This document shows, one piece after another, positions 1-59,199 of a stretch of 64,000 bases of DNA. How positions within the stretch are numbered: position 1 is the stretch's first letter; every line of letters starts with the position of its first letter. The notes under the pieces were generated by a model. That model was given only the letters and a program-made list of their open reading frames with translations, did not search any database and was not told the origin of the DNA. The DNA is taken from NCBI RefSeq assembly GCF_009834535.1, contig NC_045720.1, positions 620,001-684,000 of the forward strand, given 5' to 3'. Made by a program: the position numbers and the translations under genes. The stretch is from Camelus ferus (taxonomy: Eukaryota).

Positions 1-824
1 CCGTGACGAACGGTCACCTGGTACAAACTAACTCAGAAATGGCACAGAGGAAAGAATTAGTAAACAAGGATATTTAGACAATTAGTATAATTGAATTTCA
101 TATATTCAAGAAACCCCAGGAGAGACTGAACATGTTAATACAAAGAGGTTAAAGTAAATGATGGGGAAAGAAAAATGAGGCTGACACTAGTCATAAAAAG
201 CTAGAATGACTATATTAATAATAGACGNNNNNNNNNNNNNNNNNNNNNNNNNNNNNNNNNNNNNNNNNNNNNNNNNNNNNNNNNNNNNNNNNNNNNNNNN
301 NNNNNNNNNNNNNNNNNNNNNNNNNNNNNNNNNNNNNNNNNNNNNNNNNNNNNNNNAACTCCCTCTCTCTGTAATTGTTAGAACAAATGTACAGCAAACC
401 AGCAAGGGAAGACCTGAACAGTGCTGTCAACCAGCCTACTTGAGTCGTATTTACAGAACACTGCATTCATTATCAGTAGAACATGTATGTTCTTCCAAAA
501 GCACGTGAAGCATTTACCAAGACTGATCATATTTTGGGCAATAAAACAAGTCTCAATAAATTTAAAAGAATTCAAGTCATAGACAGAGTATGTTCTCTGA
601 CTACAGTGGAATTCAATTTGAAATCAGTAAGAGGAAGCTATCTGAGAACTCTCCAAGTATTTAGAAACTACTTAACATGTTTCAAAATAATGCATGAGTC
701 AAAAAAGAAAAAAAATTTTAAATAAGATTAGAAAGCATTTTGAAGGGAAAGAAAATGAAGACATATCAAAATTTGTGGGAAATTTATAGCACTAAATGTC
801 TGTATTAGGAAAGTAGAGTGACAT

Positions 825-3400: not shown

Positions 3401-6400
3401 AAGCGGCAGGCCCTCCGTCGTCCCCCTCCTTGCCCCCTTCGACCCTTCCTACCGGGCAGCAGGTGGCCTGCTCCCTCACTGAGAGTCTCCCCTGGTGTCC
3501 ACCTCACCTAACCCTCACTCTCTGGCCACTTCCCCTGCGCTCATGCGCTGCTCTTTGTCACACGCAGGTCACATCATGCCCACCTCTGCGCAGCAGTCTC
3601 CACTGCTGCCCCCGGAATCCAGCCTCTGCCCACCAGCCTGCACGCTCATGCTCACCCCATCCTCAGTGCGGCGTAAAGCAAACAAAAGATAAAACAGGCA
3701 AGTCATTCATGACAGATGGACAAGAGGCGCATCTGTCTCATGTTAACACGCAAAGGGGCCCGTCCGCGTCAGCAAGATGCACAGCAACGCGGGCAGCGCG
3801 CAGGCACCGGGCTCTCCCTGCGTCCCCAGCGGAAGGCTTGGGCGGAGGCCCGGCACACAGCTGCCCTCCGCCGGCACCAGACGCCGCCTGTGCTGTGGAC
3901 CCACGCAGGTGGGGACAGCCAGTGGAGCCCAAATGGTCACTCTTCACGACAGGATCACCCACCTCCCGACACCCTCCTGCAGGAGGCCTCACGTGAGGGC
4001 AACAGCCATGTATGAACAACACTTACATCTACCAGGGATCTGGTTAGACTTTTTAAAAGACAAGCATGGGGAGAGGCGGTAGCCAGGGAAGTATCAGCCA
4101 CGGTGGAAGAGCTAGGCTTCACCGGTTCGATAAGAGTCCCTCTGTGGCCCCCGCCCGGACCAGGCAGTTGGTCTGTGGGCTTATGACACACCGGGGTGGC
4201 AGCACAGACCCTGCTCCCTGTGGAGCGGACAGACGAATCTGTGAGTGCTCCACAGGGGAAGGGGATGCAAAGAGAGGGAAGGGTCTGGAAGGCCCCCTGC
4301 CTCCCTCAGGAAGCACTTAGAGGTACCATCTCCTTTCACCTGCAGGGCCAGGCAGGTCTGAGAGCAGCTGTTAGCAGCTGGGAAGCAGTGGAGCAGGACT
4401 CAAGCAGGACTGGCTCCAAGCACTCCCTCCACGCCCGCCCATGATGCCCATGAGCACAGGTCACAGAGCAGGGTGACCGTACACACTGTAGGCCACCTCA
4501 GTCAGTCAGGAGGAGTGAGGAGTCAGTCCTCCTCACCTGTACTCAGTCAGCATTCACTCAACTGCACTGAACAAATGCCCACGTGCTGCCGCCCCAGCCC
4601 ACAGAGCCCCTGGCCTGAAAGGGCCATGCGTACAACAGCTGCCACATGGACGGGCACAGGCTGAGAAAGGTGCGGGGCCAACCTTACTGAGCTGGAGGGG
4701 TCAGAGACCACGAGGGCCACACCCCCAGCCCAGAGGCAGCCTGTCCAGAGGGTGTGTGAAGGGAAACTGGGAAGTCAGGACACCATGGGGGTCATAGGAA
4801 TGTCCCACCCAGGCACGAGGCCCAAACACGAGGCCCAGGGGCCTTCCCTTCCTAGCACAGGAGCCAAAGAATCAACTCCCAGAGTCACTGACAAAAACAG
4901 GGCAGATGACCAAGCAGACAGCCCACACAGCTCACAGTCCCTTGAGAATCCAGGTTCCCAACATAAGCCACACCAAGCTGTGTCCCCCCAACCAGGTGCC
5001 TCCAGTGAAGAGGGCACCTTCCTCATGACGTCCAGCAGCCAGCCTTCCCTGAGCACTGGCCAGGAGCCTTCCTGGAGTCCCTACCCGAGCAGATCAAGCA
5101 GCTCAGCTCCATGAAGGGGCTGATCACAGATGGGCAACAACCCAGCTGCTTCCCTGGGCCTCAGTGGACTCTGGGTCTGAACCAAGCGCAGACACCTGCT
5201 TCCAGGCATGTGAGCCAGCTGTGAACTTGAGAAAGCAAGCAAGTGCCCCACGGTTCCACCTCAGGTCCACCAGTGATCCTCAGCCCAGACGTTGGTTTCA
5301 AGGTAACTCCAGGTCAGCTCAATTCCAGGTCATTCCATGCTGTCACCAAGAGAGACCAAAAACGCATGCTCACTTGAGCCACAATAGCCGAGGCCTGGGA
5401 ACCAGGATCCTGCTGACAACAGCATCCCCAGGCCCCTTGGCTGTCTGGACCGCAGGGCAACTACATCACAATCACGCCACCGGCCAAGTGGCCCACAACT
5501 GATGCTTCTCAGGTGGGTCTCCTGGGGCCCCGTGCCTGCCAGCCCCCTCCATCTGGGCCATCATCACCACTCAACCCAAAGGCTCTAACACTCAATCCAC
5601 CAACTTCACCCCTGACTTCTCTCAGGTCCCCGCCTCACCTGCCTCTTTTCCTATGTCATCATGCCCCCAGCTACCTCGGTCCGAACTCAGCATCACTCCC
5701 TCCTGTTCCTCCGTCTCCCTCCCCACACCCTACAGTCACTCACTGACCACCTTCTTCTCCACCTCTACCTTCATCCCTTTCCAAAGTGGTCACTGCCCCC
5801 AGGACTGTCCCCTCAAAGCCAGCTTCCACCCTAATCCCACCTATCCCCCCACCCCAGACAGCCGCTCCAGCTTATACCCCCCCAGAACCCTCTGCCCCCA
5901 CACCCCCTTATGCCTCATTGCACTTGAGCTTATCAGTCACCCAGCCCCAACCCTGGCAAAGGGGACCCTCTTAAGTATGCAGGTTGGAACTGCCTGTGCA
6001 CACAGAGCCCTTTTCTCAGACCCCAACACTGCACTGCAGCTATGCTGGTGCTGCAGGAAAATCAGAACCCAAAATTGGGCCTAGGAGGCCAGGGACTGTG
6101 GGCCAGCCCTGGCCTAGCACCAGCTAGGTCTCACCTTGACTGAGGGCTGGACTTCCTGCAGCCCCTTCCAGCTTTACCACCTACATTACACGACCAGAAA
6201 TCCTTAGGACTTTGGACAAATTACCTCCCTGCTCTGGACTGCCTCCTTCTCTAATGTCAAAGAGAAAATGAGAAGAATACGACGGCCTCTGCTCTTTGGG
6301 ACTGTCGGGGTCTAGGCTTAGCTTCCCATGGAGGCAACCCCTGAAGTGCCTGCTGGGGGAGCAGGAACGTGGACCACACGCCTCCGGAAAGTGACAGGCA

Positions 6401-6599
6401 CTAGGACTGGCGACCCAGTGTCCCCCAGGGAGGGGGTGGGCACAGGGGACCAGGTACCTTGAGCCCCACCCTGGGAGGGGCAGGCGGGGCGGAGGGGTAG
6501 GGACGGGTAATCTGAGCCCCACCCTGGAAAGGGTTGGGCAGGGGGACTAGGCGCCCCGCGTCCCACCCTGGGAGGGGACGGACTCGGGGACCAGGCGTC

Positions 6600-7450
6600 A
6601 GGAAGAATGTGAGCGGCTAGGCTCCCAGGCCTCTCTTCCGGGTTGTGACGCGGCAGATCCCGCTCCGCGCGGGGCTGGACGCACCTGAGCCCAGGGAAGG
6701 GGCGGGCTCGGCCCCGCGACGCCGGGACCCTCCCTTTGCTCGCCGGGTGACCTTGGAGAGGCGCCCCCTGACTCGGCTTCCCCCGCGGCCTAGCCAAGGG
6801 GGCGGCCCAAGGGTCTGCGACCCAGGATCCCCCGAGGGGCACCTCCCCGAGGGAGCGCAGCCGTCCCCTGGCCCCCTGGCCCCGGCCCCCGGATCCCGAC
6901 CGCCGTTTACCTGAGGGGCCGCCGCAGTAGCTGCCGGGGCACCGCCCTCCCGCCTGCCGTGGACCGGGGCGGGCGGGGCCACGCGACGAGCCCGTCCCGC
7001 CGCCCTCCGCCAACCGCGGCCCGGCTTGCGGTAGTCCGGCCCCGCCCCAACCCGATCTCCGAGCTCATTGGTCGGAGGGGCCTCCCTCTCGGTCTCTCCG
7101 CCCCGCCCACCGAACCCAAGAGAGCCGGAGCGCGCAAACTCCACCTCGTGCTCGGCCCCGCCCCCGGCCGCCCAGTGACCCGCACACCTGACTGTTGGGC
7201 GCGAGGACCGCCGCCGTGTGGGCCGCAAGGCGGGACTGGCCACTGCGCAGGCGCGGGAGCAGCCCCCCCCCCCCACTTCCCATTCTGCTGTGTCCCGGTC
7301 CGGTCCGTCACTTACACTCCACGATCCCCGCACACAGACCCCGCGCCACACACCGGGGGACGCAATGGGGATGTGGGTTCCGCCCGCCAAGGCGCCCAAA
7401 GCAGGTCCCCTCGCAAACACATACCTGTCCAGGTACACAGGCCAGGTGCC
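6600..7450 (-). promoter_or_regulatory. CpG-island promoter, assigned to MROH1 by synteny
   Basis: CpG-dense. CCAAT on minus (cattgg ~7066), GC boxes, NRF1-like tgcgcaggcgcg (7244-7255). Confidence 0.7.
6911..7000 (-). other. MROH1: Probable non-coding first exon of MROH1 (5' end approximate; coding exons lie beyond position 1)
   Basis: Minus-strand donor cag|GTAAAC with GT at 6910-6909 inside the CpG island. Gene identity is from synteny only (next gene after TSSK5/HGH1); no MROH1 coding sequence was seen. Confidence 0.45.
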
Positions 7451-8000
7451 CCCAATCTGGACACACACGGGCTCTGTCATGCCCTCTATCTCTCACTCAT
7501 GAACACACGCCCTGAACACCCAACAAACATCCCAGGGACCCCGAGGCCACCGTGTCCTTGCAAACAGGTACACACGTGCACCCGGGAGGCACACGTTCAG
7601 TCTGCCAACAGGCCGTGGGAATGAAGATGAGCAGGTGTCTGCATTCTGGACCTTGGAATCTGGAGGAGGCAGATTATAAACAAGTAAACGACTAAAATAC
7701 ACATGAAGTGCTCTGAGGGGTCGCAGCTAGAGGCTGAGAAAGGCAGAAGCTGAGAGAGGAGCCCGAGTTGCGGGCAGAGACACACTGGCACGTGCAAAGT
7801 CCCAAGGCTGAAATTGCCTGGACATGTTTACAAACCAAAAAATCAAGGAGTGAGTGGTGTTTCCGAAGTTCAGGAAGTAAAAAGAGCGATTTGAGAAGAA
7901 GTGGTCGGCAGCACTAACAGATGTGTGCCACTTGCTGGGACTGCAGAGAGCTGTGGGCTGGGGTGCAAGGAGGCAAAGTAGGGGCACAAGTTTAAACACT

Positions 8001-8169: not shown

Positions 8170-10251
8170 TTAAACACCAGGGTAGGGTGGCAACTGAGTA
8201 GTGCCTGGGAGGTGGGGGCATTCTTTCACAGAGAAAGGCTTCAGCCTGTTTCTGTTGCAGGGATTCAGACCAAAAGAGAACTCGGATGGCGAAGAGAGTG
8301 CGGTCCTCAGCAGATGGCGTCTGGCCCCTCAGGAAGAGCCCCACCCCCACCCACCCCAGATTTCCCCACAGGCAGGAGGGGGAGGGGTGAGCCCAGGCAT
8401 GTGGAAGTTGCCAGGGAGGGAGGCAGGAGGCCTTTTCCAAGCTCACACCTGGACCTGGACGGCTCACTCTCCCTTAGTTCCCATGGCCAGCGCCTAGCAA
8501 GCCCAGCTGGCTGGCCCTGCCCCTCCCCAGCCTCAGCTCGATTTCTTCACCCGCCAAGCAAACAAGCTGCCCCAGCACAGGTCACAGCCGTCTTTGAACT
8601 TTGATTAAATTCTTAAGGCTAATCTCCCTTCCACAACGGCAAGCTCTGTGAGAGAAAGGCCCCTGTCTGTGATTTGCTCCCAAGGGCTCAGCACCAAGCC
8701 CAGTACTTGGCAGGCACTCAGTGAAGCTCCGTGAAGTAGCTGGATGAGCCAGGGTGCAGAGAAAGTGGAAGGTGGACAGAGCTGGTGATCATTCTGGATC
8801 CTGCCTGTCATCTGCCCAGGCAACAGTCACTGGCTTCCAGTTGTGTTCTGGTACTGGTGGGAGCCAGGAATGTGAGGGGGGCACAGCACAGACACCCTTG
8901 GCCGGAGCCACATGGTTTTCCCTTTTGCTGCTCCAGCTTGGACATGGCACTCTCCAGCCTAAGTAACACCTGAGTAACTATCCCAAGTTAAAGCCCCTCC
9001 GCTTGAAATACCTGGAGCGGTTTCTATTTTCCTAAACCTCAGGTCAGCAACAAACCAGTTTGTCCATATTGTCTATATTCCAGGCAACTTGCCAGAACGG
9101 GGCTATAGGGGAGCAAGGGAGCATCAAACGCAAGCCCGCTCTCAAGAAGCTCAAAATCCAGCGGGGATGAGATGTGTCTTACTCGTTCACGAGCGAGTAC
9201 TCTGAGGCTCTCCCTGCACTGGGAGTAATACCTCACCCACCGTGAATCCCAGGGGGACAAGCCAAGTTCACAGACCCTCCCAGGACAGCAGCCACAGCCA
9301 CTGTGCATCCAGCTCACAGAAGAGATACCATGAATTTGGGCCCCATGTGTGTCATCTGTAAAAGGGGTATCACTTGGTGGTGCTCAGATTTGAAATCCTG
9401 GGTGTGAACCGTCTACCACAGGACAGGCACATCGGGCGTAACTGTGAACAAAAGCAGACTGCAGGAGGGGCGGCTGCAGCTCCTAGGAACGCTTTGAACA
9501 GCACCCGGCCCATGGCAGGCACTCAGCAAACAGTAGGCGGCTACTCCCCAGCATAACAGCACCCACAGGACTCCAGGGCCCAGGAGACAGGAGGGGACAT
9601 GTTGGCTCCTCTCTCCTGGAGCTGGAGGGTTGAGGTAGGCCCTTGCAGATCTTTGCTTGCCTGGGGAAATGTCATCAAGTGTGCAGAGAGCTCTAGGGGA
9701 AAGCCTGAGCAGAAGCTTTAGTCCCCAGCAGAGGAAGGCTGAGTGGCTCCCCCACATGCCAGCTTCTTTGAAGGCCTTTTATGGCCAGCCAGGGTGGCCC
9801 AAGAGGCCTTACCCTGGCTCTAGCCCTTAGGGTTCTCATCCTACCAAGTGGGACCCATGCAGGGCAGGAATGGTTCCAGCAAGATGTCTTTAGAGCAGGC
9901 AAGTCCTGGGGGACAGGACAGCCCCTTCAAGGGCACAATGCAGGTATGGCTCTAGAACCTGCCCCTGCTTTCCCAGACCCTGCCCTCTCCCACGCCAGTT
10001 CATGCTTGTGTAGCTGGGTTAGCCTCCCATCCTGAGCTCTCAGCCCCGGTCACTCTCCCGTCTGAGCCCCAGTCCCAGCAAGAATTCAGAAACTGGGCAG
10101 CAGCCTTGAGGGGGCGCAACTGGCCTCCTGCAGCCCCATCACCCCTGCCCCTCTAACACAAGTTAGGCCTCAGCCGTGCCTCCCAACCCCCTCCCCAAGA
10201 CCCTGCAGTGAACTGGACGGCCCCACCCTCTTCTGCAGTGCCCTGCCCTCC

Positions 10252-11673
10252 ATGAAGGGCAGTGGCAGCAAAAACCGGACTAGAAAACCTTCATGGAGCA
10301 GGTGCGTGAATGCAGGGACAAGGGCTACCTGCTCTCCTCCAAGAAGAATGGCTCTGGGGCCTTCCCCAAAGTCTGCCCGACCTATGCCATGTGAGAGCAC
10401 ATGTGGCACAACTCAAAGCTGGCCTCTAACCTGCGACGCAAACACTGTACCATGGTGAGGTCGGCCTGCCTCCTCCCCATGGGCCCCGCCTCCAGCCCAG
10501 CCCCAGTGGCCCCTGTCCTAACTCCACTCAGGCACCCCTCAGGGCCTCTGGCTCCCTCCTGGTCCCACAACCTCCCTGAGGGCCAAGCCTCCTGCAGGCT
10601 GATCACTCCCAGTTTCCAGACGCCCTGAACATATAAGTTCTTGGATGAGGGGGGTCAGCGCTGGCCCCCAGAGATGCTGCCAACCCTACCTGGCCCAGCC
10701 AAGTTCCACAGTGAGCACAAAGAACAGAGGCCCCTCACGCCGCATCCTGCCCCGAGGGGCTGTGGTCTCCCCACAGGGGCCACCCCCAACCCCTGCAAGC
10801 AGCTATCAAGGCCACCTCCACCTCTGAGGCCCCACAGGCTCTCCCGCTAGTTCCTGCCCGTGAGATCCTGTCACTCAGTGTTGCCTACAAGCACCTAAAT
10901 GTGGTGGAAGGGACCCCGGGGCCAACCTGTCCCCATCCTGCCCACTCCAGGCTTGCACCCTTCCCCACCAGGGACCGTTATGCTCAGGCCCAACCCCATC
11001 CTGAGACCCCAGTCCAGTGCCTGGACAGCCCCTCCTTGGGACAATAGCAGGTGCAGGTGGGTGGGAGTCTGGCAGGTGCAAGAGACCTGCCAGAACAGCC
11101 AGCGCTCCTACTTGATGCTGAGTGCCAGGACCCCATCCGAGGCCTGCTCCAGCTGCAGCCCCAAGTGCACCTGGGCCTGCAGCAGGTGGCTAAGCACCAC
11201 GCACGCACTCTTCTGCACCCTGCTCGGTTTGTACCAGGTGTGACAGGCCCACGAGGGTGGGCAGGTGGGCAGCTCCTCAGCACCTCCTGCGCCCCACCCA
11301 CCACCATCTGACGGTCCCACTGCAATTGGTTGCAGAGAAGCTGGAGGAGTCTCAGCTCTCAGCGTCCCTGGATAACACGGAGCCCAGCTCAGACTCAGAT
11401 GCCCCAAGGCCCCTCCTGCAACTGCGGCGTCTGCAGCAACAGGGCGCCCTACCCAATGGCACCTCCGTGCCTGAGCACCCTGGGGCTCGCCCCAGACGAG
11501 GTGCGGGCTCTGCCGGGCTGGTGCTCTGGGGCTTGGAGGCCAGTCATGGGGCGCAGCGGGGTAGGTCCCTCCGGCATCGCTGTTGCTGTGCTCCGTGTCT
11601 GCCACCCAGAGCCTGCCTGGGCACCACCTGTTAACCGAGGGTGTGCAGGCAGGCCGGGGTGAGGCCAGATAAA
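10252..11673 (+). pseudogene. TSSK5: Unitary pseudogene of testis-specific serine kinase 5
   Basis: Exon remnants 10252-10454 (MKGSG.. / KTFMEQVRECRDKGYLLSSKKNGSGAFPKV..HNSKLASNLR), 10799-10903 (AAIK..REILSLSVAYKHLNV), 11076-11237 (VQETCQNSQRSYLML joined to ECQDPIRGLLQLQ..LGLQQVA) and 11336-~11673 (LDNTEP). Matches recalled TSSK5 orthologues and the syntenic position. Frameshift, stops at 10281, 10392 and 10848, no HRD or DFG motifs. Confidence 0.9.
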
Positions 11674-11676
11674 GCG

Positions 11677-11682
11677 TTTATT
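11677..11682 (-). terminator. AATAAA polyadenylation signal of HGH1
   Basis: tttatt on plus strand ~1.3 kb downstream of the HGH1 stop codon. Confidence 0.7.
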
Positions 11683-12958
11683 CTGTGGAGCCGAGGGTGT
11701 GGACTTCACAATACAGGAAGAGGGCCACAGGCCCTGGGGCACCTCGAAAAGAGTCCACATACCTACATGCCAGAGCTTTCATTTAATTGGGAGGGAAGGG
11801 GGAATAGAGAGGGACTACTGAGGAGGGAGATACCTGGCACCACAAAGAACCCAGCCTTGATGGGAGTGCGCAAGTGGAGCTACCTCCAGCTTTAAGGCAG
11901 TACCAGACTGAGACTTGTGGAGTCGGGAGTATTGGGAACTCTTGGGAAGAGAAGCTACCCTCTGGCACCAGGGTACAAGGGGCCTGGGAGGGCCAGTACA
12001 CAGGGGTCCTGTGCAAAAGATGGCACTAGGTTTGGTGGGAGGCTCTGGAAGAGAGTACAGTGGGGTGAGGGCCAAACAGACAGCCTACCAGTGACAGTCT
12101 TCAAGGCTTGGTGGCTGAAGAATTGGGGGTACCACACATGGAGCCAGGGGCTCCAAGGGGGCAGAGGGTGGTGGGGAAAAAACCTTGGACCATGGGCAAG
12201 GCTGCAGGCGTATCAGGGAGGCTCTCAGCATGGTAGGCAAGGGGTTCTGGGGAGCTGAGACTCAGGGAAGTTGACCAGGGAGAGGGCCTAGCTATTGGAA
12301 GAGGGCGAGGGCATCAGCTTAGTCCAGAACTGGGAAACAGGACTCGAGGAGCTTGCACAGGGCTGAGAACTGGGTTTGAGCAAGGTCAAGTGGGAAGGTG
12401 GAGAGGATGAGAGGGAGTGCTCCAGGGAGAGGCCAGGGGGATGCAGCCCTAGGAGGCTCCAGGACAGGTTGTGGCTGGTGAGAATCTCAACAAGTCAGCC
12501 CTTTGAGGCCGAGTCTCAGGCAGGGCAAGCTGAGGGCCCCAGGACAGGACTGGCAGCAAGGGGCACTGCAAGCACCTGGGTGCCCACCTACGCCCAGACC
12601 ACTGCAGCACCCCTGGGACTGGGAAGCTTCAGCTGACCCCTCCAGCTTGCAGTACTTTTCTGTCCAGCCTCATAGGACACCCCGAGGATGTACCTGAGCA
12701 AGTCATAGGGCCTGGCCAGCTCTGGTTGAACATTCCTTCTCTGAGCAACCAGCATTCTTGCTGGAAGCAACAGTGCCCTCAAAACTTCAGTGTTTCCTGA
12801 GCACTCGCTCTAGGGCCCTCAGCAAGGACCTGGAGCTTACAGGTGGCTCTGCTTCTCAGCAGCGCACAGCCTCAGAGCAAGGGGACCCGGAGGCCTGCCG
12901 GCAGCTGCAGATGGGTCTGGTCTGGGAAGCCTGGAGCTGGTGGCGGGCTTCAGGGGCC

Positions 12959-14709
12959 TCAGGTGGGTGCAGCTCCCTCTGCTTGTGGCTCTGGAGCCAG
13001 TTCCTGCTCCTGACGCTTCTGCGCACACTGCTCCTGGTCCTGGAGGTCCTGCTGCTGCAGCTCTCGCTCAATATCTTCGGGCACCTGCACCTCCAGCAGG
13101 TTCTCCATGCCGTGCTCCGGCTCGTCCCCAATAAGCACCTGCCAGCAGGGCAGGCAGGTGAGCAGCTGGCTAGCACACCACGCTCACCCACCACCCCCCT
13201 AGCCCCGCACCCACCTGGATGAGTTTCTCACAAGCCATCCGCACATCGGGCTCTGACTCCCAGCTGTGCAGCTCACGCAGGATCAGGTAGGCTCCCTGGT
13301 CTCTCACCTGCTTCCGACCAGGCGCCGTTGCTGTCAGCTGGGAGAGGACAGAGGTTACCCAGATGTTGTGTACTTGTGTGTGTTGCGGGGGGCATTAATG
13401 TAGCAGGACCGCTGCTCACCAGCATGATGGCCTCAATGAGCATTTTGCGGATGTCGGCATCAGACTCTCGCTGCTTGTCTGACGGCAGGTACTGCAGGTC
13501 AACAGGCAGCCCTAGGGGTGAATGTGGGAGTCACTGGGTCCCTATGTGGCCCCTGGGCTGATACGCCAGACCCTACCATTGTAAGCCAAATCTGTGCTTA
13601 GCTCCCTGCTGGAATGTTTCAGAAGAGGCCCTGACCTGGACACCTTCTCCCTCTCCCCTAATGGCCTCCCTTCCTGCCTAGCCAACCCTGAGGCTCAGCC
13701 CAAGCCACTCACGCTCCATCTCCTCCTCAGAGAAGTCCTCAGGCCCAGCCAAGGGCAGTAGCAAGAAGGGGAGAATGTCCACCTCGGGCCCAAGCAACCA
13801 CTCATGGTGTCCTGGGGGAAATAGGAATGGAGGCCAGTCCAGAGGGGCCCCAGTCCAGTCTATCCCCCCCCCCCATTCTCCGACATGGCAATTTCCCCAC
13901 CACCACTCACGGTGCTCGAAGCAGCAGTTTCGCAGTGTCCCCACCACCCCGCCCCTGCGCACCGAGGAGTCCGCGTATTGGGTAAGGGGCAGCAGCCGCT
14001 GGACCACGCACCTGGAGGGAAGGACCACTCAGTGCCGTCCCTTCTCACTTTCACCCCCTCCCAGCGAGCACCCTGGGCTTCACCTGTCGCGGTCTAGCAG
14101 GAAAGCGCGCGTGGCGGGACGCTGGCTGAGGTTAGAAAGCACAGGCCCCAGGTAGTGAAGGGGCGCGCGGGGGTTGTAGCCGGGAGTGCACAGCGCTCGA
14201 ACCAGCCGCTCCAGGCCCGTCTCCACCGGCTCCGCGGCCGCCAGCGCCGCCATCAGCGCAGCACACGGCGCCGGCTCGCGGCTGAGGTTAGCCAGCACGG
14301 CGGCCGCCTCTTCGGCCCAGGGCCACTGTGGGTCCAACGCGCAGCCCAGCAGGCGGGAGGGCAGCCCGGGCTCGGCCGCCAGCAGCGGATCGTACAGGCC
14401 GGGGTCGGCGGCCAGATTGACGAGCGCGCGAGCGGCGTCTCGGGCCGGGGCGGGAGCAGGGGCCACCGCGAGCTCGACCAGCGCCCGCAGCAGTGCCCCT
14501 TGGCCGGCCAGCAGCGTGCGGCCCGGCTCCGAGCCGGTCAGCGCCAGCACGTGCTGCGCCGCCGCCGCCTGCAGGTCACCCCGCGCTCCGAGCGCCAGGA
14601 AGGGCAGCAGCTTCGCAGCCGCCGCCTTCGGGCCGGCCTCTGGCATCGGCGACCCTACGGAAGCGAGGCTGCCGGCTGACGCGCCCGAGTCAGCCCCGGC
14701 GTCCACCAT
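12959..14709 (-). CDS. HGH1: Protein HGH1 homolog (FAM203A; eEF2 chaperone), 406 aa, 6 exons
   Basis: Exons 14709-14084, 14011-13911, 13811-13713, 13511-13420, 13337-13215, 13138-12959. All GT-AG, phases consistent, 1221 nt. Motifs KLLPFL..DLQAAA, SSVRRGGVVGTLRNCCF, LPVDLQYLP. Confidence 0.95.
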
Positions 14710-15060
14710 GCCGGTCGGTGCGCTCGGGTCAGCGCGCGTAGATCCGCCTGGCACCGCCGCGGCGCAGCGGCCCCGCCCACCACGGTAGCGGAAGCTGCAA
14801 CGGCCAATCCGAGGCTGTCGACTCTGCGCAGGGGGCGGGACCGCCGCTCGGAGGCGGGGCCACGCGGAGGCCGGGGGATTGTGGGATTGGGTGCCGGCCC
14901 GGAAGCCGCGCGCCTCAGTTGCCCGGCAGCGGTGGGGGTCCCGAGGCACGGACGCTGCGCCAGCTGTGGCGCCGTCGCAGGGGGTCCTGCCAGCCACCGA
15001 GAGCTGGCTGGTCACGTGGCCCTCTTCCTTCGCGGGCCGACGGAGATCCATCTTCACTGA
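13950..15060 (-). promoter_or_regulatory. CpG island / HGH1 promoter
   Basis: CpG-dense. CCAAT (~14804), GC boxes, ETS-like cggaag motifs. Confidence 0.75.
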
Positions 15061-43405: not shown

Positions 43406-44347
43406 AGCAACATCTTTTAATACAATTAAAATTAATGTAACACTAATCTGAAGCAGACTGTTACAAATTAAGATGTCAGTTGTAATCCCAGGGGCAATCA
43501 CTAAGAAAATAACTCATAAAGTGTAGTCAAAGAAATGACAAAGGAATTTAAATGGTACACTGGAAAATAACTACCTAATACAAAAGAAAGACAACAATGA
43601 AGAAATTGGGGGGGAAAAGACATAAGACATAGAGCAAATATCAAGATAGCAGATATAAATTGTACTATATTATTAATTATATTAAATGTAAATGGATTAA
43701 GATCTCCAGTTAAAGGGCAGGGACTGGCATAATGGATTTTTTTTAAAGTCATGATTCAACTATATAATGTCTATAAGAAACACATTTTATACTCAAAGAC
43801 ACAAATAGGTAGAAAGTTAAAAACCTGGAAGAAGATACACCATACCAACAGTAACTGAGAGAGCTATTGGGACTGTATTAATATTAAACAATATAAACTT
43901 TCAGACAAACATTGATACTAGAGTAAAAGAAGGACATTTTATAATGAAAAAAGGATCAATTCACCAAGAAGACATACCAGCTATAAAGATACATTTGCCC
44001 AACAAAGCCCCAAAATACATGAAGCAAAACTGGACAGAATTGAAGGGAGAAACGGAAAATTTACCATGACAGTTGGAGATGTCAATACCCCACTTTCAGT
44101 AATGGATAGCACAACTAGACAGAAGATCAGCAAGGAAAGAGAAGACCTGAACAACACAATAAGCCAACTAGACCTAACAGACATCAATGGAACAGTCCAC
44201 CCAACAACAGAAGAGTGCANNNNNNNNNNNNNNNNNNNNNNNNNNNNNNNNNNNNNNNNNNNNNNNNNNNNNNNNNNNNNNNNNNNNNNNNNNNNNNNNN
44301 NNNNNNNNNNNNNNNNNNNNNNNNNNNNNNNNNNNNNNNNNNNNNNN

Positions 44348-58065: not shown

Positions 58066-59199
58066 NNNNNNNNNNNNNNNNNNNNNNNNNNNNNNNNNNN
58101 NNNNNNNNNNNNNNNNNNNNNNNNNNNNNNNNNNNNNNNNNNNNNNNNNNNNNNNNNNNNNNNNNNNNNNNNNNNNNNNNNNNNNNNNNNNNNNNNNNNN
58201 NNNNNNNNNNNNNNNNNNNNNNNNNNNNNNNNNNNNNNNNNNNNNNNNNNGCCTCGTTCTTCTATCCGCACGCACCCCCACCTGCCTTAGCTTAAGAAAT
58301 GGTTCTTCCATGTTTTTCTCCATACTCCCAAAATTACATCCAAGGCACACAGATACATGCAGTTGTACATGTACAGCCATATAGTGGCTTTTGGGACTCT
58401 GGTTATTTTTAAAAATGGGATTATTTCATACACACTTTTCTGTTTTTTACTCAAAAAATGTCTTTTGAAACCTGTTCGGTTAATCCTGTGGAACTCTAAT
58501 TAACTTTTTGCTTGATACCCGGGCTGGATGTACCTGGATGTATCCGGCTACTGCTCCATTGAGGACAGTGGGTGTGTGTTCAGGGGCTCAGGGCTTGGAA
58601 TCCCAGGGTAGGGACTTTGTGGGTGAAGGCTGTAAGTGTGAGAGTTCCTTTTTCCCTCTCACACCAAGAATAAGTGTTGCAGTTTTTTACATAATCATTG
58701 CCAGCCGGCAGAGTGTTACTGGCATCTTGCATTTCTGGGCATGGTGTATTCCAGCATCTTATGTCAGTCAAATCCACTGGAATTGCTGATGGGTCTACAG
58801 GAGGGAGAAATGAGGGGCTTTCCTCTCCAGGTGCCTCCTGTTTCCAGGTACCTCTGTTTCCTGGTGGTCAAGGTCACCAGCAGGGAGCTTATCCCAGCAC
58901 CCCCCGCACCCCCTCCCCAGCTGCATTATTCGTTCCCTCTGCAGTGCTTAGGAAGCCAGGTCCCATGTTTCAGGTTTGAATGGACAGGGATGCAACACTC
59001 ACCAAGAGGAGGCAACATTCACAGGGGCCTAGGAATGGGCACAGGCCAGTGTCCCAGGACGGCCTACATGTGCCATCTTTCAGGTCCTTTCATGCTGTTC
59101 CTTTACATCCAGTTCCCACATTGCAATAAAGTGGGTCCCCTTTTTCCATTTAAGAGTGAAAATACTGTCACCCTTTTCAGAAAGGGATTGCATAGCATT

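What the first reader, a model, noticed from the sequence alone, without database searches (positions are those of the whole stretch)
10252..10454. TSSK5 is inactivated in exon 1: likely an independent, non-primate loss of a testis kinase
Seen: the ATG at 10252 is out of frame with the kinase frame (only 8 nt, agcaaaaa, between GGC and CCG GAC). The kinase frame has TAG at 10281-10283 and TGA at 10392-10394. The Gly-loop region reads KKNGSGAFPKVCPT instead of the recalled KKIGSGAFSKVYLA. Known: TSSK5 is intact in mouse and a pseudogene (TSSK5P) in human. Inference: a convergent loss in the camelid lineage. I do not know of a published report, but cannot exclude one. All seven neighbouring genes are intact, which argues against poor local sequence quality.
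Basis: partly seen in the sequence, partly recalled or inferred. Interest (0 to 1): 0.8.

Follow-up and report, generated by a model that had tools for sequence, protein, structure and literature searches.

The report
Dead TSSK5 kinase gene in camelids
The camel copy of the testis kinase gene TSSK5 is a long-dead pseudogene. It carries stop codons, frameshifts, a broken splice site and a deletion of its catalytic core, nearly all shared by camels and alpaca. This loss is separate from the known one in humans and Old World monkeys, and is ordinary gene decay.

Summary

**What is in the window.** It holds the orthologous TSSK5 locus, lying tail to tail with HGH1. Against intact yak and dog TSSK5, the copy carries:
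- a 1-bp deletion after 10267;
- three stops in the ancestral frame: TAG 10281-10283, TGA 10392-10394 and TAG 10848-10850;
- a lost exon-2 acceptor (AG to AA);
- further frameshifts of -2, -1, -17 and -1 bp;
- a lost stop codon;
- a deletion of about 1.3 kb, with its junction at 11119|11120, that removes codons 122-274, including the HRD, DFG and APE motifs.

**Not an assembly artefact.** A second Camelus assembly is identical here. The dromedary (99.3% identical) and the alpaca (94.8%) share every lesion except the TGA at 10392, which is Camelus-only because alpaca has CGA.

**Age and constraint.** The gene therefore died before Old World and New World camelids split. Since then, exons and introns have diverged equally (95.9% identity each) and there is no third-codon-position excess.

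**Independence.** Ruminants keep an intact, spliced and transcribed gene, so the camelid loss is independent.

**Context.** Cetaceans, and a pig-like contig, also carry decayed TSSK5 with different lesions, so the gene looks recurrently dispensable. No report of a camelid loss was found among 37 open-access papers that mention TSSK5. Interest is moderate to low.

The parts
10252..10454 (+). TSSK5 pseudogene exon 1 (ancestral codons 1-68). The ATG is retained. There is a 1-bp deletion after 10267, Gln11 is changed to TAG (10281-10283), codon 48 is TGA (10392-10394, Camelus only), and the Gly-rich loop region carries radical substitutions (I>N, S>P, Y>C, L>P, A>T). The GT donor at 10455-10456 is kept.
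10797..10798 (+). Intron 1 acceptor mutated from AG to AA. Shared by Camelus and Vicugna.
10799..10903 (+). Exon 2 remnant (codons 69-104, including the VAIK lysine). It carries a 2-bp deletion after 10833, Lys86 changed to TAG (10848-10850) and a 1-bp deletion after 10856.
11076..11119 (+). Truncated exon 3 (codons 105-121 only), with an in-frame 6-bp deletion after 11081.
11119..11121 (+). Junction of a deletion of about 1.3 kb (1,345 bp in yak coordinates, L001 6880-8224). It removes the rest of exon 3, exons 4-6 and introns 3-6, which is 458 coding nt, or codons 122-274, holding the HRDLKCEN, DFG, APE and DLWSLG motifs. GAG microhomology sits at the junction. The joined pieces are out of frame.
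11121..11237 (+). Exon 7 remnant (ECQDPIRGLLQL...), with a 17-bp deletion after 11199 and a 1-bp deletion after 11228.
11336..11638 (+). Exon 8 remnant (C-terminal tail), with several indels. The ancestral TGA stop at 11636-11638 has changed to CGA.
11700..14720 (-). Intact neighbour HGH1 (approximate span; not part of the pseudogene). It lies tail to tail with TSSK5, and this synteny marker shows that the window holds the orthologous locus.

Best explanation
Window 10252-11638 (+) is the unitary pseudogene of TSSK5, sitting at its ancestral position tail to tail with HGH1. It cannot make a kinase. Translation from the retained ATG shifts frame after five codons. The ancestral frame holds three stops. 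The exon-2 acceptor is destroyed. A genomic deletion of about 1.3 kb fused codon 121 out of frame to exon 7, which removed 153 of the 273 kinase-domain residues, including the catalytic loop, the DFG motif and the activation segment. Almost all lesions are shared by Camelus and Vicugna, so the gene was inactivated in the camelid stem lineage and has drifted neutrally since. From the substitution pattern, inactivation happened roughly midway along that stem, perhaps 35-45 million years ago. The lesions, their sharing and the neutrality are shown. The date and the lack of any residual function are inferred.
For: - **Identity and synteny.** The best protein matches of the exon-1 piece are TSSK5 orthologues. 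HGH1 lies convergent downstream, as it does in yak, dog and vaquita.
- **Lesion list.** It was read from a MAFFT alignment against yak exons defined by a spliced cDNA contig.
- **No trace of the core.** tblastn finds no match to codons 122-270 anywhere in the 64-kb window.
- **The deletion.** blastn gives window 9814-11120 = yak 5521-6880 and window 11120-13500 = yak 8225-10541.
- **Four assemblies from at least three species.** L007 is the window's own assembly. L006 is identical over the region. The dromedary L008 is 99.3% identical. The alpaca L009 is 94.8% identical, colinear and carries the same breakpoints.
- **Neutral evolution.** Between Camelus and Vicugna, exon identity is 95.9% and intron identity is 95.9%. 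Differences by codon position are 12/14/5. There are 14.5 nonsynonymous against 1.5 synonymous changes, which is incompatible with omega 0.15-0.18 (p about 1e-5 to 5e-5) and compatible with omega 1.
- **Stem lineage.** Camelid stem omega is 0.53, against 0.15-0.18 for yak and dog.
- **No camelid TSSK5 protein.** None appears among the best 120 hits, which reach down to fish orthologues, although camelid proteomes are in that database.
Against: - No whole-genome search of a camelid assembly could be run, so an intact duplicate or retrocopy elsewhere is not formally excluded.
- No expression data were examined.
- The C-terminal exon is poorly conserved even between dog and yak, so its small indels are weak evidence on their own.
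- The dating rests on about 140 codons, a parsimony ancestor and divergence times recalled from memory.
Confidence: 0.93

Rival explanations
1. The lesions are sequencing or assembly errors in one camel assembly, and the real gene is intact.
For: The window does contain three N runs, although none lies near the gene.
Against: A second Camelus assembly is 100% identical over window 9800-11800. The dromedary and alpaca assemblies carry the same deletion breakpoints, frameshifts and two of the stops. Lineage-specific extra lesions fit a real phylogeny: the TGA at 10392 is Camelus-only, and two TGA codons are alpaca-only.
Confidence: 0.01
2. This locus is dead, but camelids keep a functional TSSK5 as a duplicate or retrocopy elsewhere, so there is no loss of function.
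For: TSSK family members have spread by retroposition before: TSSK1B is a primate retrogene (PMC7401350).
Against: No camelid protein appears among the best 120 TSSK5 homologues, which extend to fish at E about 1e-98. Camelus and Vicugna RefSeq proteins are present in the same database. The scan's notes on this genome hold no other TSSK finding, which is weak evidence.
Confidence: 0.04
3. The remnant keeps a non-kinase role, for example as a transcribed non-coding RNA, as a short N-terminal peptide, or as a regulatory element for MROH1 or HGH1.
For: Human TSSK5P is still transcribed, mainly in brain (PMC7401350). The ATG, several splice sites and the upstream region are retained.
Against: Exon and intron divergence between Camelus and Vicugna are equal at 95.9%, and there is no codon-position bias. 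This shows no detectable constraint on the remnant. The longest ORFs there are out-of-frame read-throughs with no family match.
Confidence: 0.05

Closest known systems
Human and catarrhine TSSK5P (TSSK5P1), a unitary pseudogene at 8q24.3
   Same: It is the same gene at the same syntenic position, also lost as a unitary pseudogene in a whole clade (PMC2864566, PMC7401350).
   Different: It is an independent event in a different order. According to PMC7401350, the human copy keeps the first 101 codons before a premature stop. The camelid copy is already broken at codon 6 and codon 11 and lacks the catalytic core through a 1.3-kb deletion. The human sequence was not compared here.
Functional TSSK5 of ruminants, carnivores and rodents (yak P0050, dog P0041, hyena P0022, mouse P0070)
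   Same: These are orthologues with the same 8-exon layout and the same neighbour, HGH1. The retained exons align at 74-77% nucleotide identity.
   Different: They have complete ORFs of 372-416 aa (393-416 aa outside mouse), and the one scanned, yak P0050, has a full Pkinase domain at residues 30-302. The camelid copy has none.
Cetacean and pig-like TSSK5 remnants (found here)
   Same: They are other decayed TSSK5 copies within Cetartiodactyla, at the same locus next to HGH1.
   Different: Their lesions differ. Cetaceans share a 4-bp deletion at the end of exon 3 and a lost original ATG, and they keep the region that is deleted in camelids. Ruminants, which are closer to cetaceans than camelids are, have an intact gene, so these losses are separate events.

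Membership tests
TSSK5 orthologue (gene identity) | Best sequence similarity is to TSSK5 rather than to other TSSK or CAMK kinases | tested here: met
   A phmmer search with the exon-1 piece returns proteins that the sources name TSSK5. tblastn with hyena and felid TSSK5 gives E = 3e-15 to 2e-19 for exon 1, and exons 2, 3, 7 and 8 also match.
TSSK5 orthologue (gene identity) | Conserved position, convergent with HGH1 | tested here: met
   HGH1 (DUF383/DUF384) lies downstream on the opposite strand in yak, dog, vaquita and the window. In the fin whale locus, a gene with an MROH-type HEAT domain lies upstream.
TSSK5 orthologue (gene identity) | Multi-exon structure (8 coding exons), unlike the intronless TSSK1, TSSK2 and TSSK6 | tested here: met
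   Remnants of exons 1, 2, 3, 7 and 8 are colinear with the yak exons mapped from cDNA.
Functional protein kinase (Pfam PF00069) | Uninterrupted ORF across the kinase domain | tested here: not met
   There are three stops in the ancestral frame and frameshifts of -1, -2, -1, -17 and -1 bp, plus the out-of-frame deletion junction. The pieces give no Pkinase hit in Pfam.
Functional protein kinase (Pfam PF00069) | Catalytic loop HRD, the DFG motif and the APE activation segment | tested here: not met
   Codons 122-274 are deleted, and they have no match anywhere in the window.
Unitary pseudogene (lineage-specific gene loss) | Disabling lesions fixed and shared across the clade | tested here: met
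   The lesions are the same in C. ferus, a second Camelus assembly, C. dromedarius and V. pacos.
Unitary pseudogene (lineage-specific gene loss) | Neutral evolution after inactivation | tested here: met
   Exon identity equals intron identity at 95.9%. Differences by codon position are 12/14/5. The N:S ratio is incompatible with functional omega.
Unitary pseudogene (lineage-specific gene loss) | No functional copy elsewhere in the genome | tested here: inconclusive
   No camelid TSSK5 protein appears among the database hits, but no whole-genome nucleotide search was possible.
Unitary pseudogene (lineage-specific gene loss) | Functional orthologue in related lineages | tested here: met
   Intact models exist in Bos, Ovis, Capra, cervids, Equus, Canis and others. 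A spliced yak or cattle cDNA contig, L002, carries the complete 416-aa ORF.

The most novel reading that the evidence does not exclude
TSSK5, described in the literature as conserved since early amniotes and lost only in catarrhine primates, has been lost independently at least three times within Cetartiodactyla alone. The losses fall in the camelid stem, the cetacean stem and the suid lineage, while ruminants keep the gene. That would make it a recurrently dispensable testis kinase. It would also mean its loss needs no primate-specific compensation by TSSK1B.
Probability: 0.6. Interest if true: 0.45.

Novelty: new member of a known kind. Interest (0 to 1): 0.35.

Why it matters
TSSK kinases are studied as targets for male contraception and as candidate fertility genes. 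[quoted passage not shown]

A clean, ancient loss across all camelids examined, together with the decayed copies seen here in cetaceans and a pig-like contig, argues instead that TSSK5 is dispensable in several mammalian lineages without that compensation. This bears on how mouse Tssk5 data are read and on comparative work on camelid male fertility.

It is still ordinary gene decay of a testis-specific gene, and large gene-loss resources probably already record it implicitly.

Tried and rejected
- **Pfam scan of the five stop-free pieces.** It gave no kinase hit because the pieces are too short. The only hit was a chance PLATZ match below threshold. One search failed on a mistyped frame and was corrected.
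- **Search with the ORF that spans the deletion junction.** It found no homologue in the protein database, so other camelid copies could not be reached that way.
- **Exact look-ups of hyena TSSK5 and alpaca HGH1 isoform X2.** Neither was on record. I reached the alpaca locus through isoform X1 from the cluster list instead.
- **Fin whale locus L003.** It has masked N runs over exons 4, 5, 7 and part of exon 8. I left them unread and used vaquita for those exons.
- **Scan notebook.** It holds no other TSSK note for this genome, which says little either way.
- **Shared camelid-cetacean inactivation.** I considered and rejected it. The lesions differ, cetaceans keep the region deleted in camelids, and ruminants are intact.
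- **Reading the TGA at 10392 as an ancestral lesion.** I considered and rejected it, because alpaca has CGA there.

Full report
**Observation**

- The ATG at 10252 is in frame 1.
- The kinase-like reading (...KTFMEQVRECRDKGYLLSSKKNGSGAFPKVCPTYAM*EHMWHNSKLASNLRRKHCTMV) is in frame 0.
- That frame has TAG at 10281-10283 and TGA at 10392-10394.
- Exon 1 ends at 10454 in front of a GT donor.
- The 8 nt between GGC and CCGGAC correspond to 9 nt in yak and dog, so this is a 1-bp deletion after 10267.

**Identity of the gene**

A phmmer search of 1.84 billion representative proteins with the 36-residue stop-free exon-1 piece returned 31 hits. Those that carry a name are called TSSK5, from hyena, felids, voles, lizard, turtle and whales.

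A search with hyena TSSK5 (P0022) listed full-length TSSK5 models in ruminants, equids, carnivores, bats, eulipotyphlans, afrotherians, rodents, marsupials, monotremes, reptiles and fish. No camelid or pig protein was among the best 120 hits.

The yak locus (L001) and a spliced yak or cattle cDNA contig (L002) gave an exact 8-exon structure and a 416-aa ORF. Its Pkinase domain spans residues 30-302. In yak, dog and vaquita the gene is convergent with HGH1, and the same holds in the window. The window therefore holds the orthologous locus and not a stray copy.

**Anatomy of the damage**

blastn maps window 9814-11120 onto yak 5521-6880, and window 11120-13500 onto yak 8225-10541. About 1,345 bp of yak sequence have no counterpart. 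This stretch covers the last 153 nt of exon 3, all of exons 4-6 and introns 3-6.

That removes 458 coding nt, or codons 122-274. The lost residues include HRDLKCEN, DFG, APE and DLWSLG, and amount to 153 of the 273 kinase-domain residues. The junction joins codon 121 out of frame to exon 7. tblastn finds no trace of the missing part anywhere in the 64-kb window. The junction shows a GAG microhomology.

The multiple alignment adds these lesions:
- a 1-bp deletion after 10267;
- Gln11 changed to TAG;
- codon 48 reading TGA;
- the exon-2 acceptor changed from AG to AA (10797-10798);
- a 2-bp deletion after 10833;
- Lys86 changed to TAG (10848-10850);
- a 1-bp deletion after 10856;
- an in-frame 6-bp deletion after 11081;
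- a 17-bp deletion after 11199;
- a 1-bp deletion after 11228;
- several indels in exon 8;
- loss of the ancestral stop codon at 11636-11638.

**Artefact or real**

The large first exon of HGH1, used as a query, returned Camelus ferus HGH1 at 100% identity and Vicugna pacos HGH1 at 98%. This confirms that the window is camelid.

Fetching the loci that encode those proteins gave four assemblies:
- L007 (GCA_009834535.1) is 100% identical over 16 kb and is the window's own assembly.
- L006 (GCA_048773025.1, Camelus) is 100% identical over the pseudogene.
- L008 (C. dromedarius, GCA_000803125.3) is 99.3% identical.
- L009 (V. pacos, GCA_048564905.1) is 94.8% identical and colinear.

All of these assemblies have the same deletion breakpoints, the same frameshifts, the two TAG codons, the AA acceptor and the lost stop.

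The TGA at 10392 is present in both Camelus species but reads CGA in alpaca, so it is a later CpG transition. Alpaca has two TGA codons of its own, at codons 280 and 375. This nested pattern is what a real, old pseudogene should show.

**Selection and timing**

- **Camelus against Vicugna.** The retained exon columns are 95.9% identical, exactly like the intron columns. Differences fall 12/14/5 on codon positions 1/2/3.
- **Functional comparison.** Dog against yak shows 78-81% exon identity against 64-65% intron identity, with a third-position excess of 45/42/75.
- **Nei-Gojobori counts on the kinase exons.** Omega is 0.18 for yak-dog, 0.15 for the yak branch and 0.53 for the camelid stem. Within camelids there are 14.5 nonsynonymous against 1.5 synonymous changes. 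That ratio is incompatible with omega 0.15-0.18 (p about 1e-5 to 5e-5) and compatible with neutrality.
- **Dating.** Divergence times recalled from memory are roughly 60-65 million years for Tylopoda against other artiodactyls, and roughly 16-25 million years for Camelini against Lamini. On those figures, inactivation falls very roughly 35-45 million years ago. This is an inference from few sites.

**Independence and context**

The literature held here describes TSSK5 as a unitary pseudogene in humans and other catarrhines, and as conserved elsewhere since amniotes (PMC2864566, PMC7401350). Of the 37 papers that mention TSSK5, none deals with camelids or cetaceans.

Ruminants, which are nested inside Cetartiodactyla, have an intact and transcribed gene. 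The camelid loss must therefore be its own event.

Two further cases turned up in passing:
- **Cetaceans.** Vaquita TSSK5 has lost its original ATG, several splice sites and its reading frame. It shares a 4-bp deletion at the end of exon 3, which removes the His-Arg of the HRD motif, with fin whale. This points to a loss in the cetacean stem.
- **Pig-like contig.** A 10-kb contig that carries a pig-type HGH1 has a badly eroded TSSK5. Exons 1 and 4 are undetectable, and the remaining exons are 71-79% identical to yak with many gaps.

Neither case shares lesions with camelids.

**Mechanism**

This is a dead gene. No kinase can be made from it, and no constraint is detectable on what remains. A residual non-coding role or an intact copy elsewhere cannot be formally excluded with these tools, but both are unlikely.

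**Verdict**

The finding is a new example of a known kind of event, a lineage-specific unitary pseudogene of a gene already known to be lost in primates. Its interest is moderate to low. It would rise somewhat if recurrent loss across Cetartiodactyla is confirmed on reference assemblies.

Noticed in passing
L005:9940-12800 (vaquita) and L003:12020-14760 (fin whale): Cetacean TSSK5 is also a pseudogene. The original ATG is lost in both species, and both share a 4-bp deletion at the exon 3 / intron 3 boundary that removes the His-Arg of the HRD motif. Vaquita also has the exon 1 donor changed from GT to GA, the exon 3 and exon 8 acceptors lost, and the exon 5 donor lost. None of these lesions is shared with camelids. 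The N runs in the fin whale locus were left unread.
   Followed up: partly
L010:4300-6500 (10-kb ENA metagenome contig with pig-type HGH1): A suid-like TSSK5 remnant lies downstream of HGH1. Yak exons 1 and 4 give no hit. The other exons are 71-79% identical to yak, with 2-8 gaps each and in changing frames. This suggests a third artiodactyl loss, but the species of the contig is only inferred from its HGH1.
   Followed up: partly
L008:10008-15151 (C. dromedarius GCA_000803125.3): The deposited annotation has a 1,204-aa gene model with no Pfam domain lying across the TSSK5 pseudogene region. It is probably a spurious read-through model.
   Followed up: no
proteins P0003, P0036, P0037, P0043 (felids) and P0047 (meerkat): Several feliform TSSK5 models are truncated or contain retained intron sequence. 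Two of them, P0043 (Panthera) and P0047 (Suricata), are flagged LOW QUALITY by the source. TSSK5 may be decaying in some carnivores too, while hyena and dog look intact.
   Followed up: no
L002 (Logan contig from SRR27968225): This is a fully spliced Bos TSSK5 cDNA contig with the complete 416-aa ORF. It shows that the ruminant gene is transcribed and correctly spliced.
   Followed up: yes
window 228-356, 44220-44347, 58066-58250: Three N runs (442 bases in all). None lies near the TSSK5 remnant. They were left as they are.
   Followed up: no
window 6300-7600: A very G+C-rich stretch with long spurious ORFs on both strands lies upstream of the TSSK5 remnant. It is probably the CpG-island promoter and first exon of the divergent neighbour, a MROH1-like gene to judge from the fin whale locus.
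   Followed up: no
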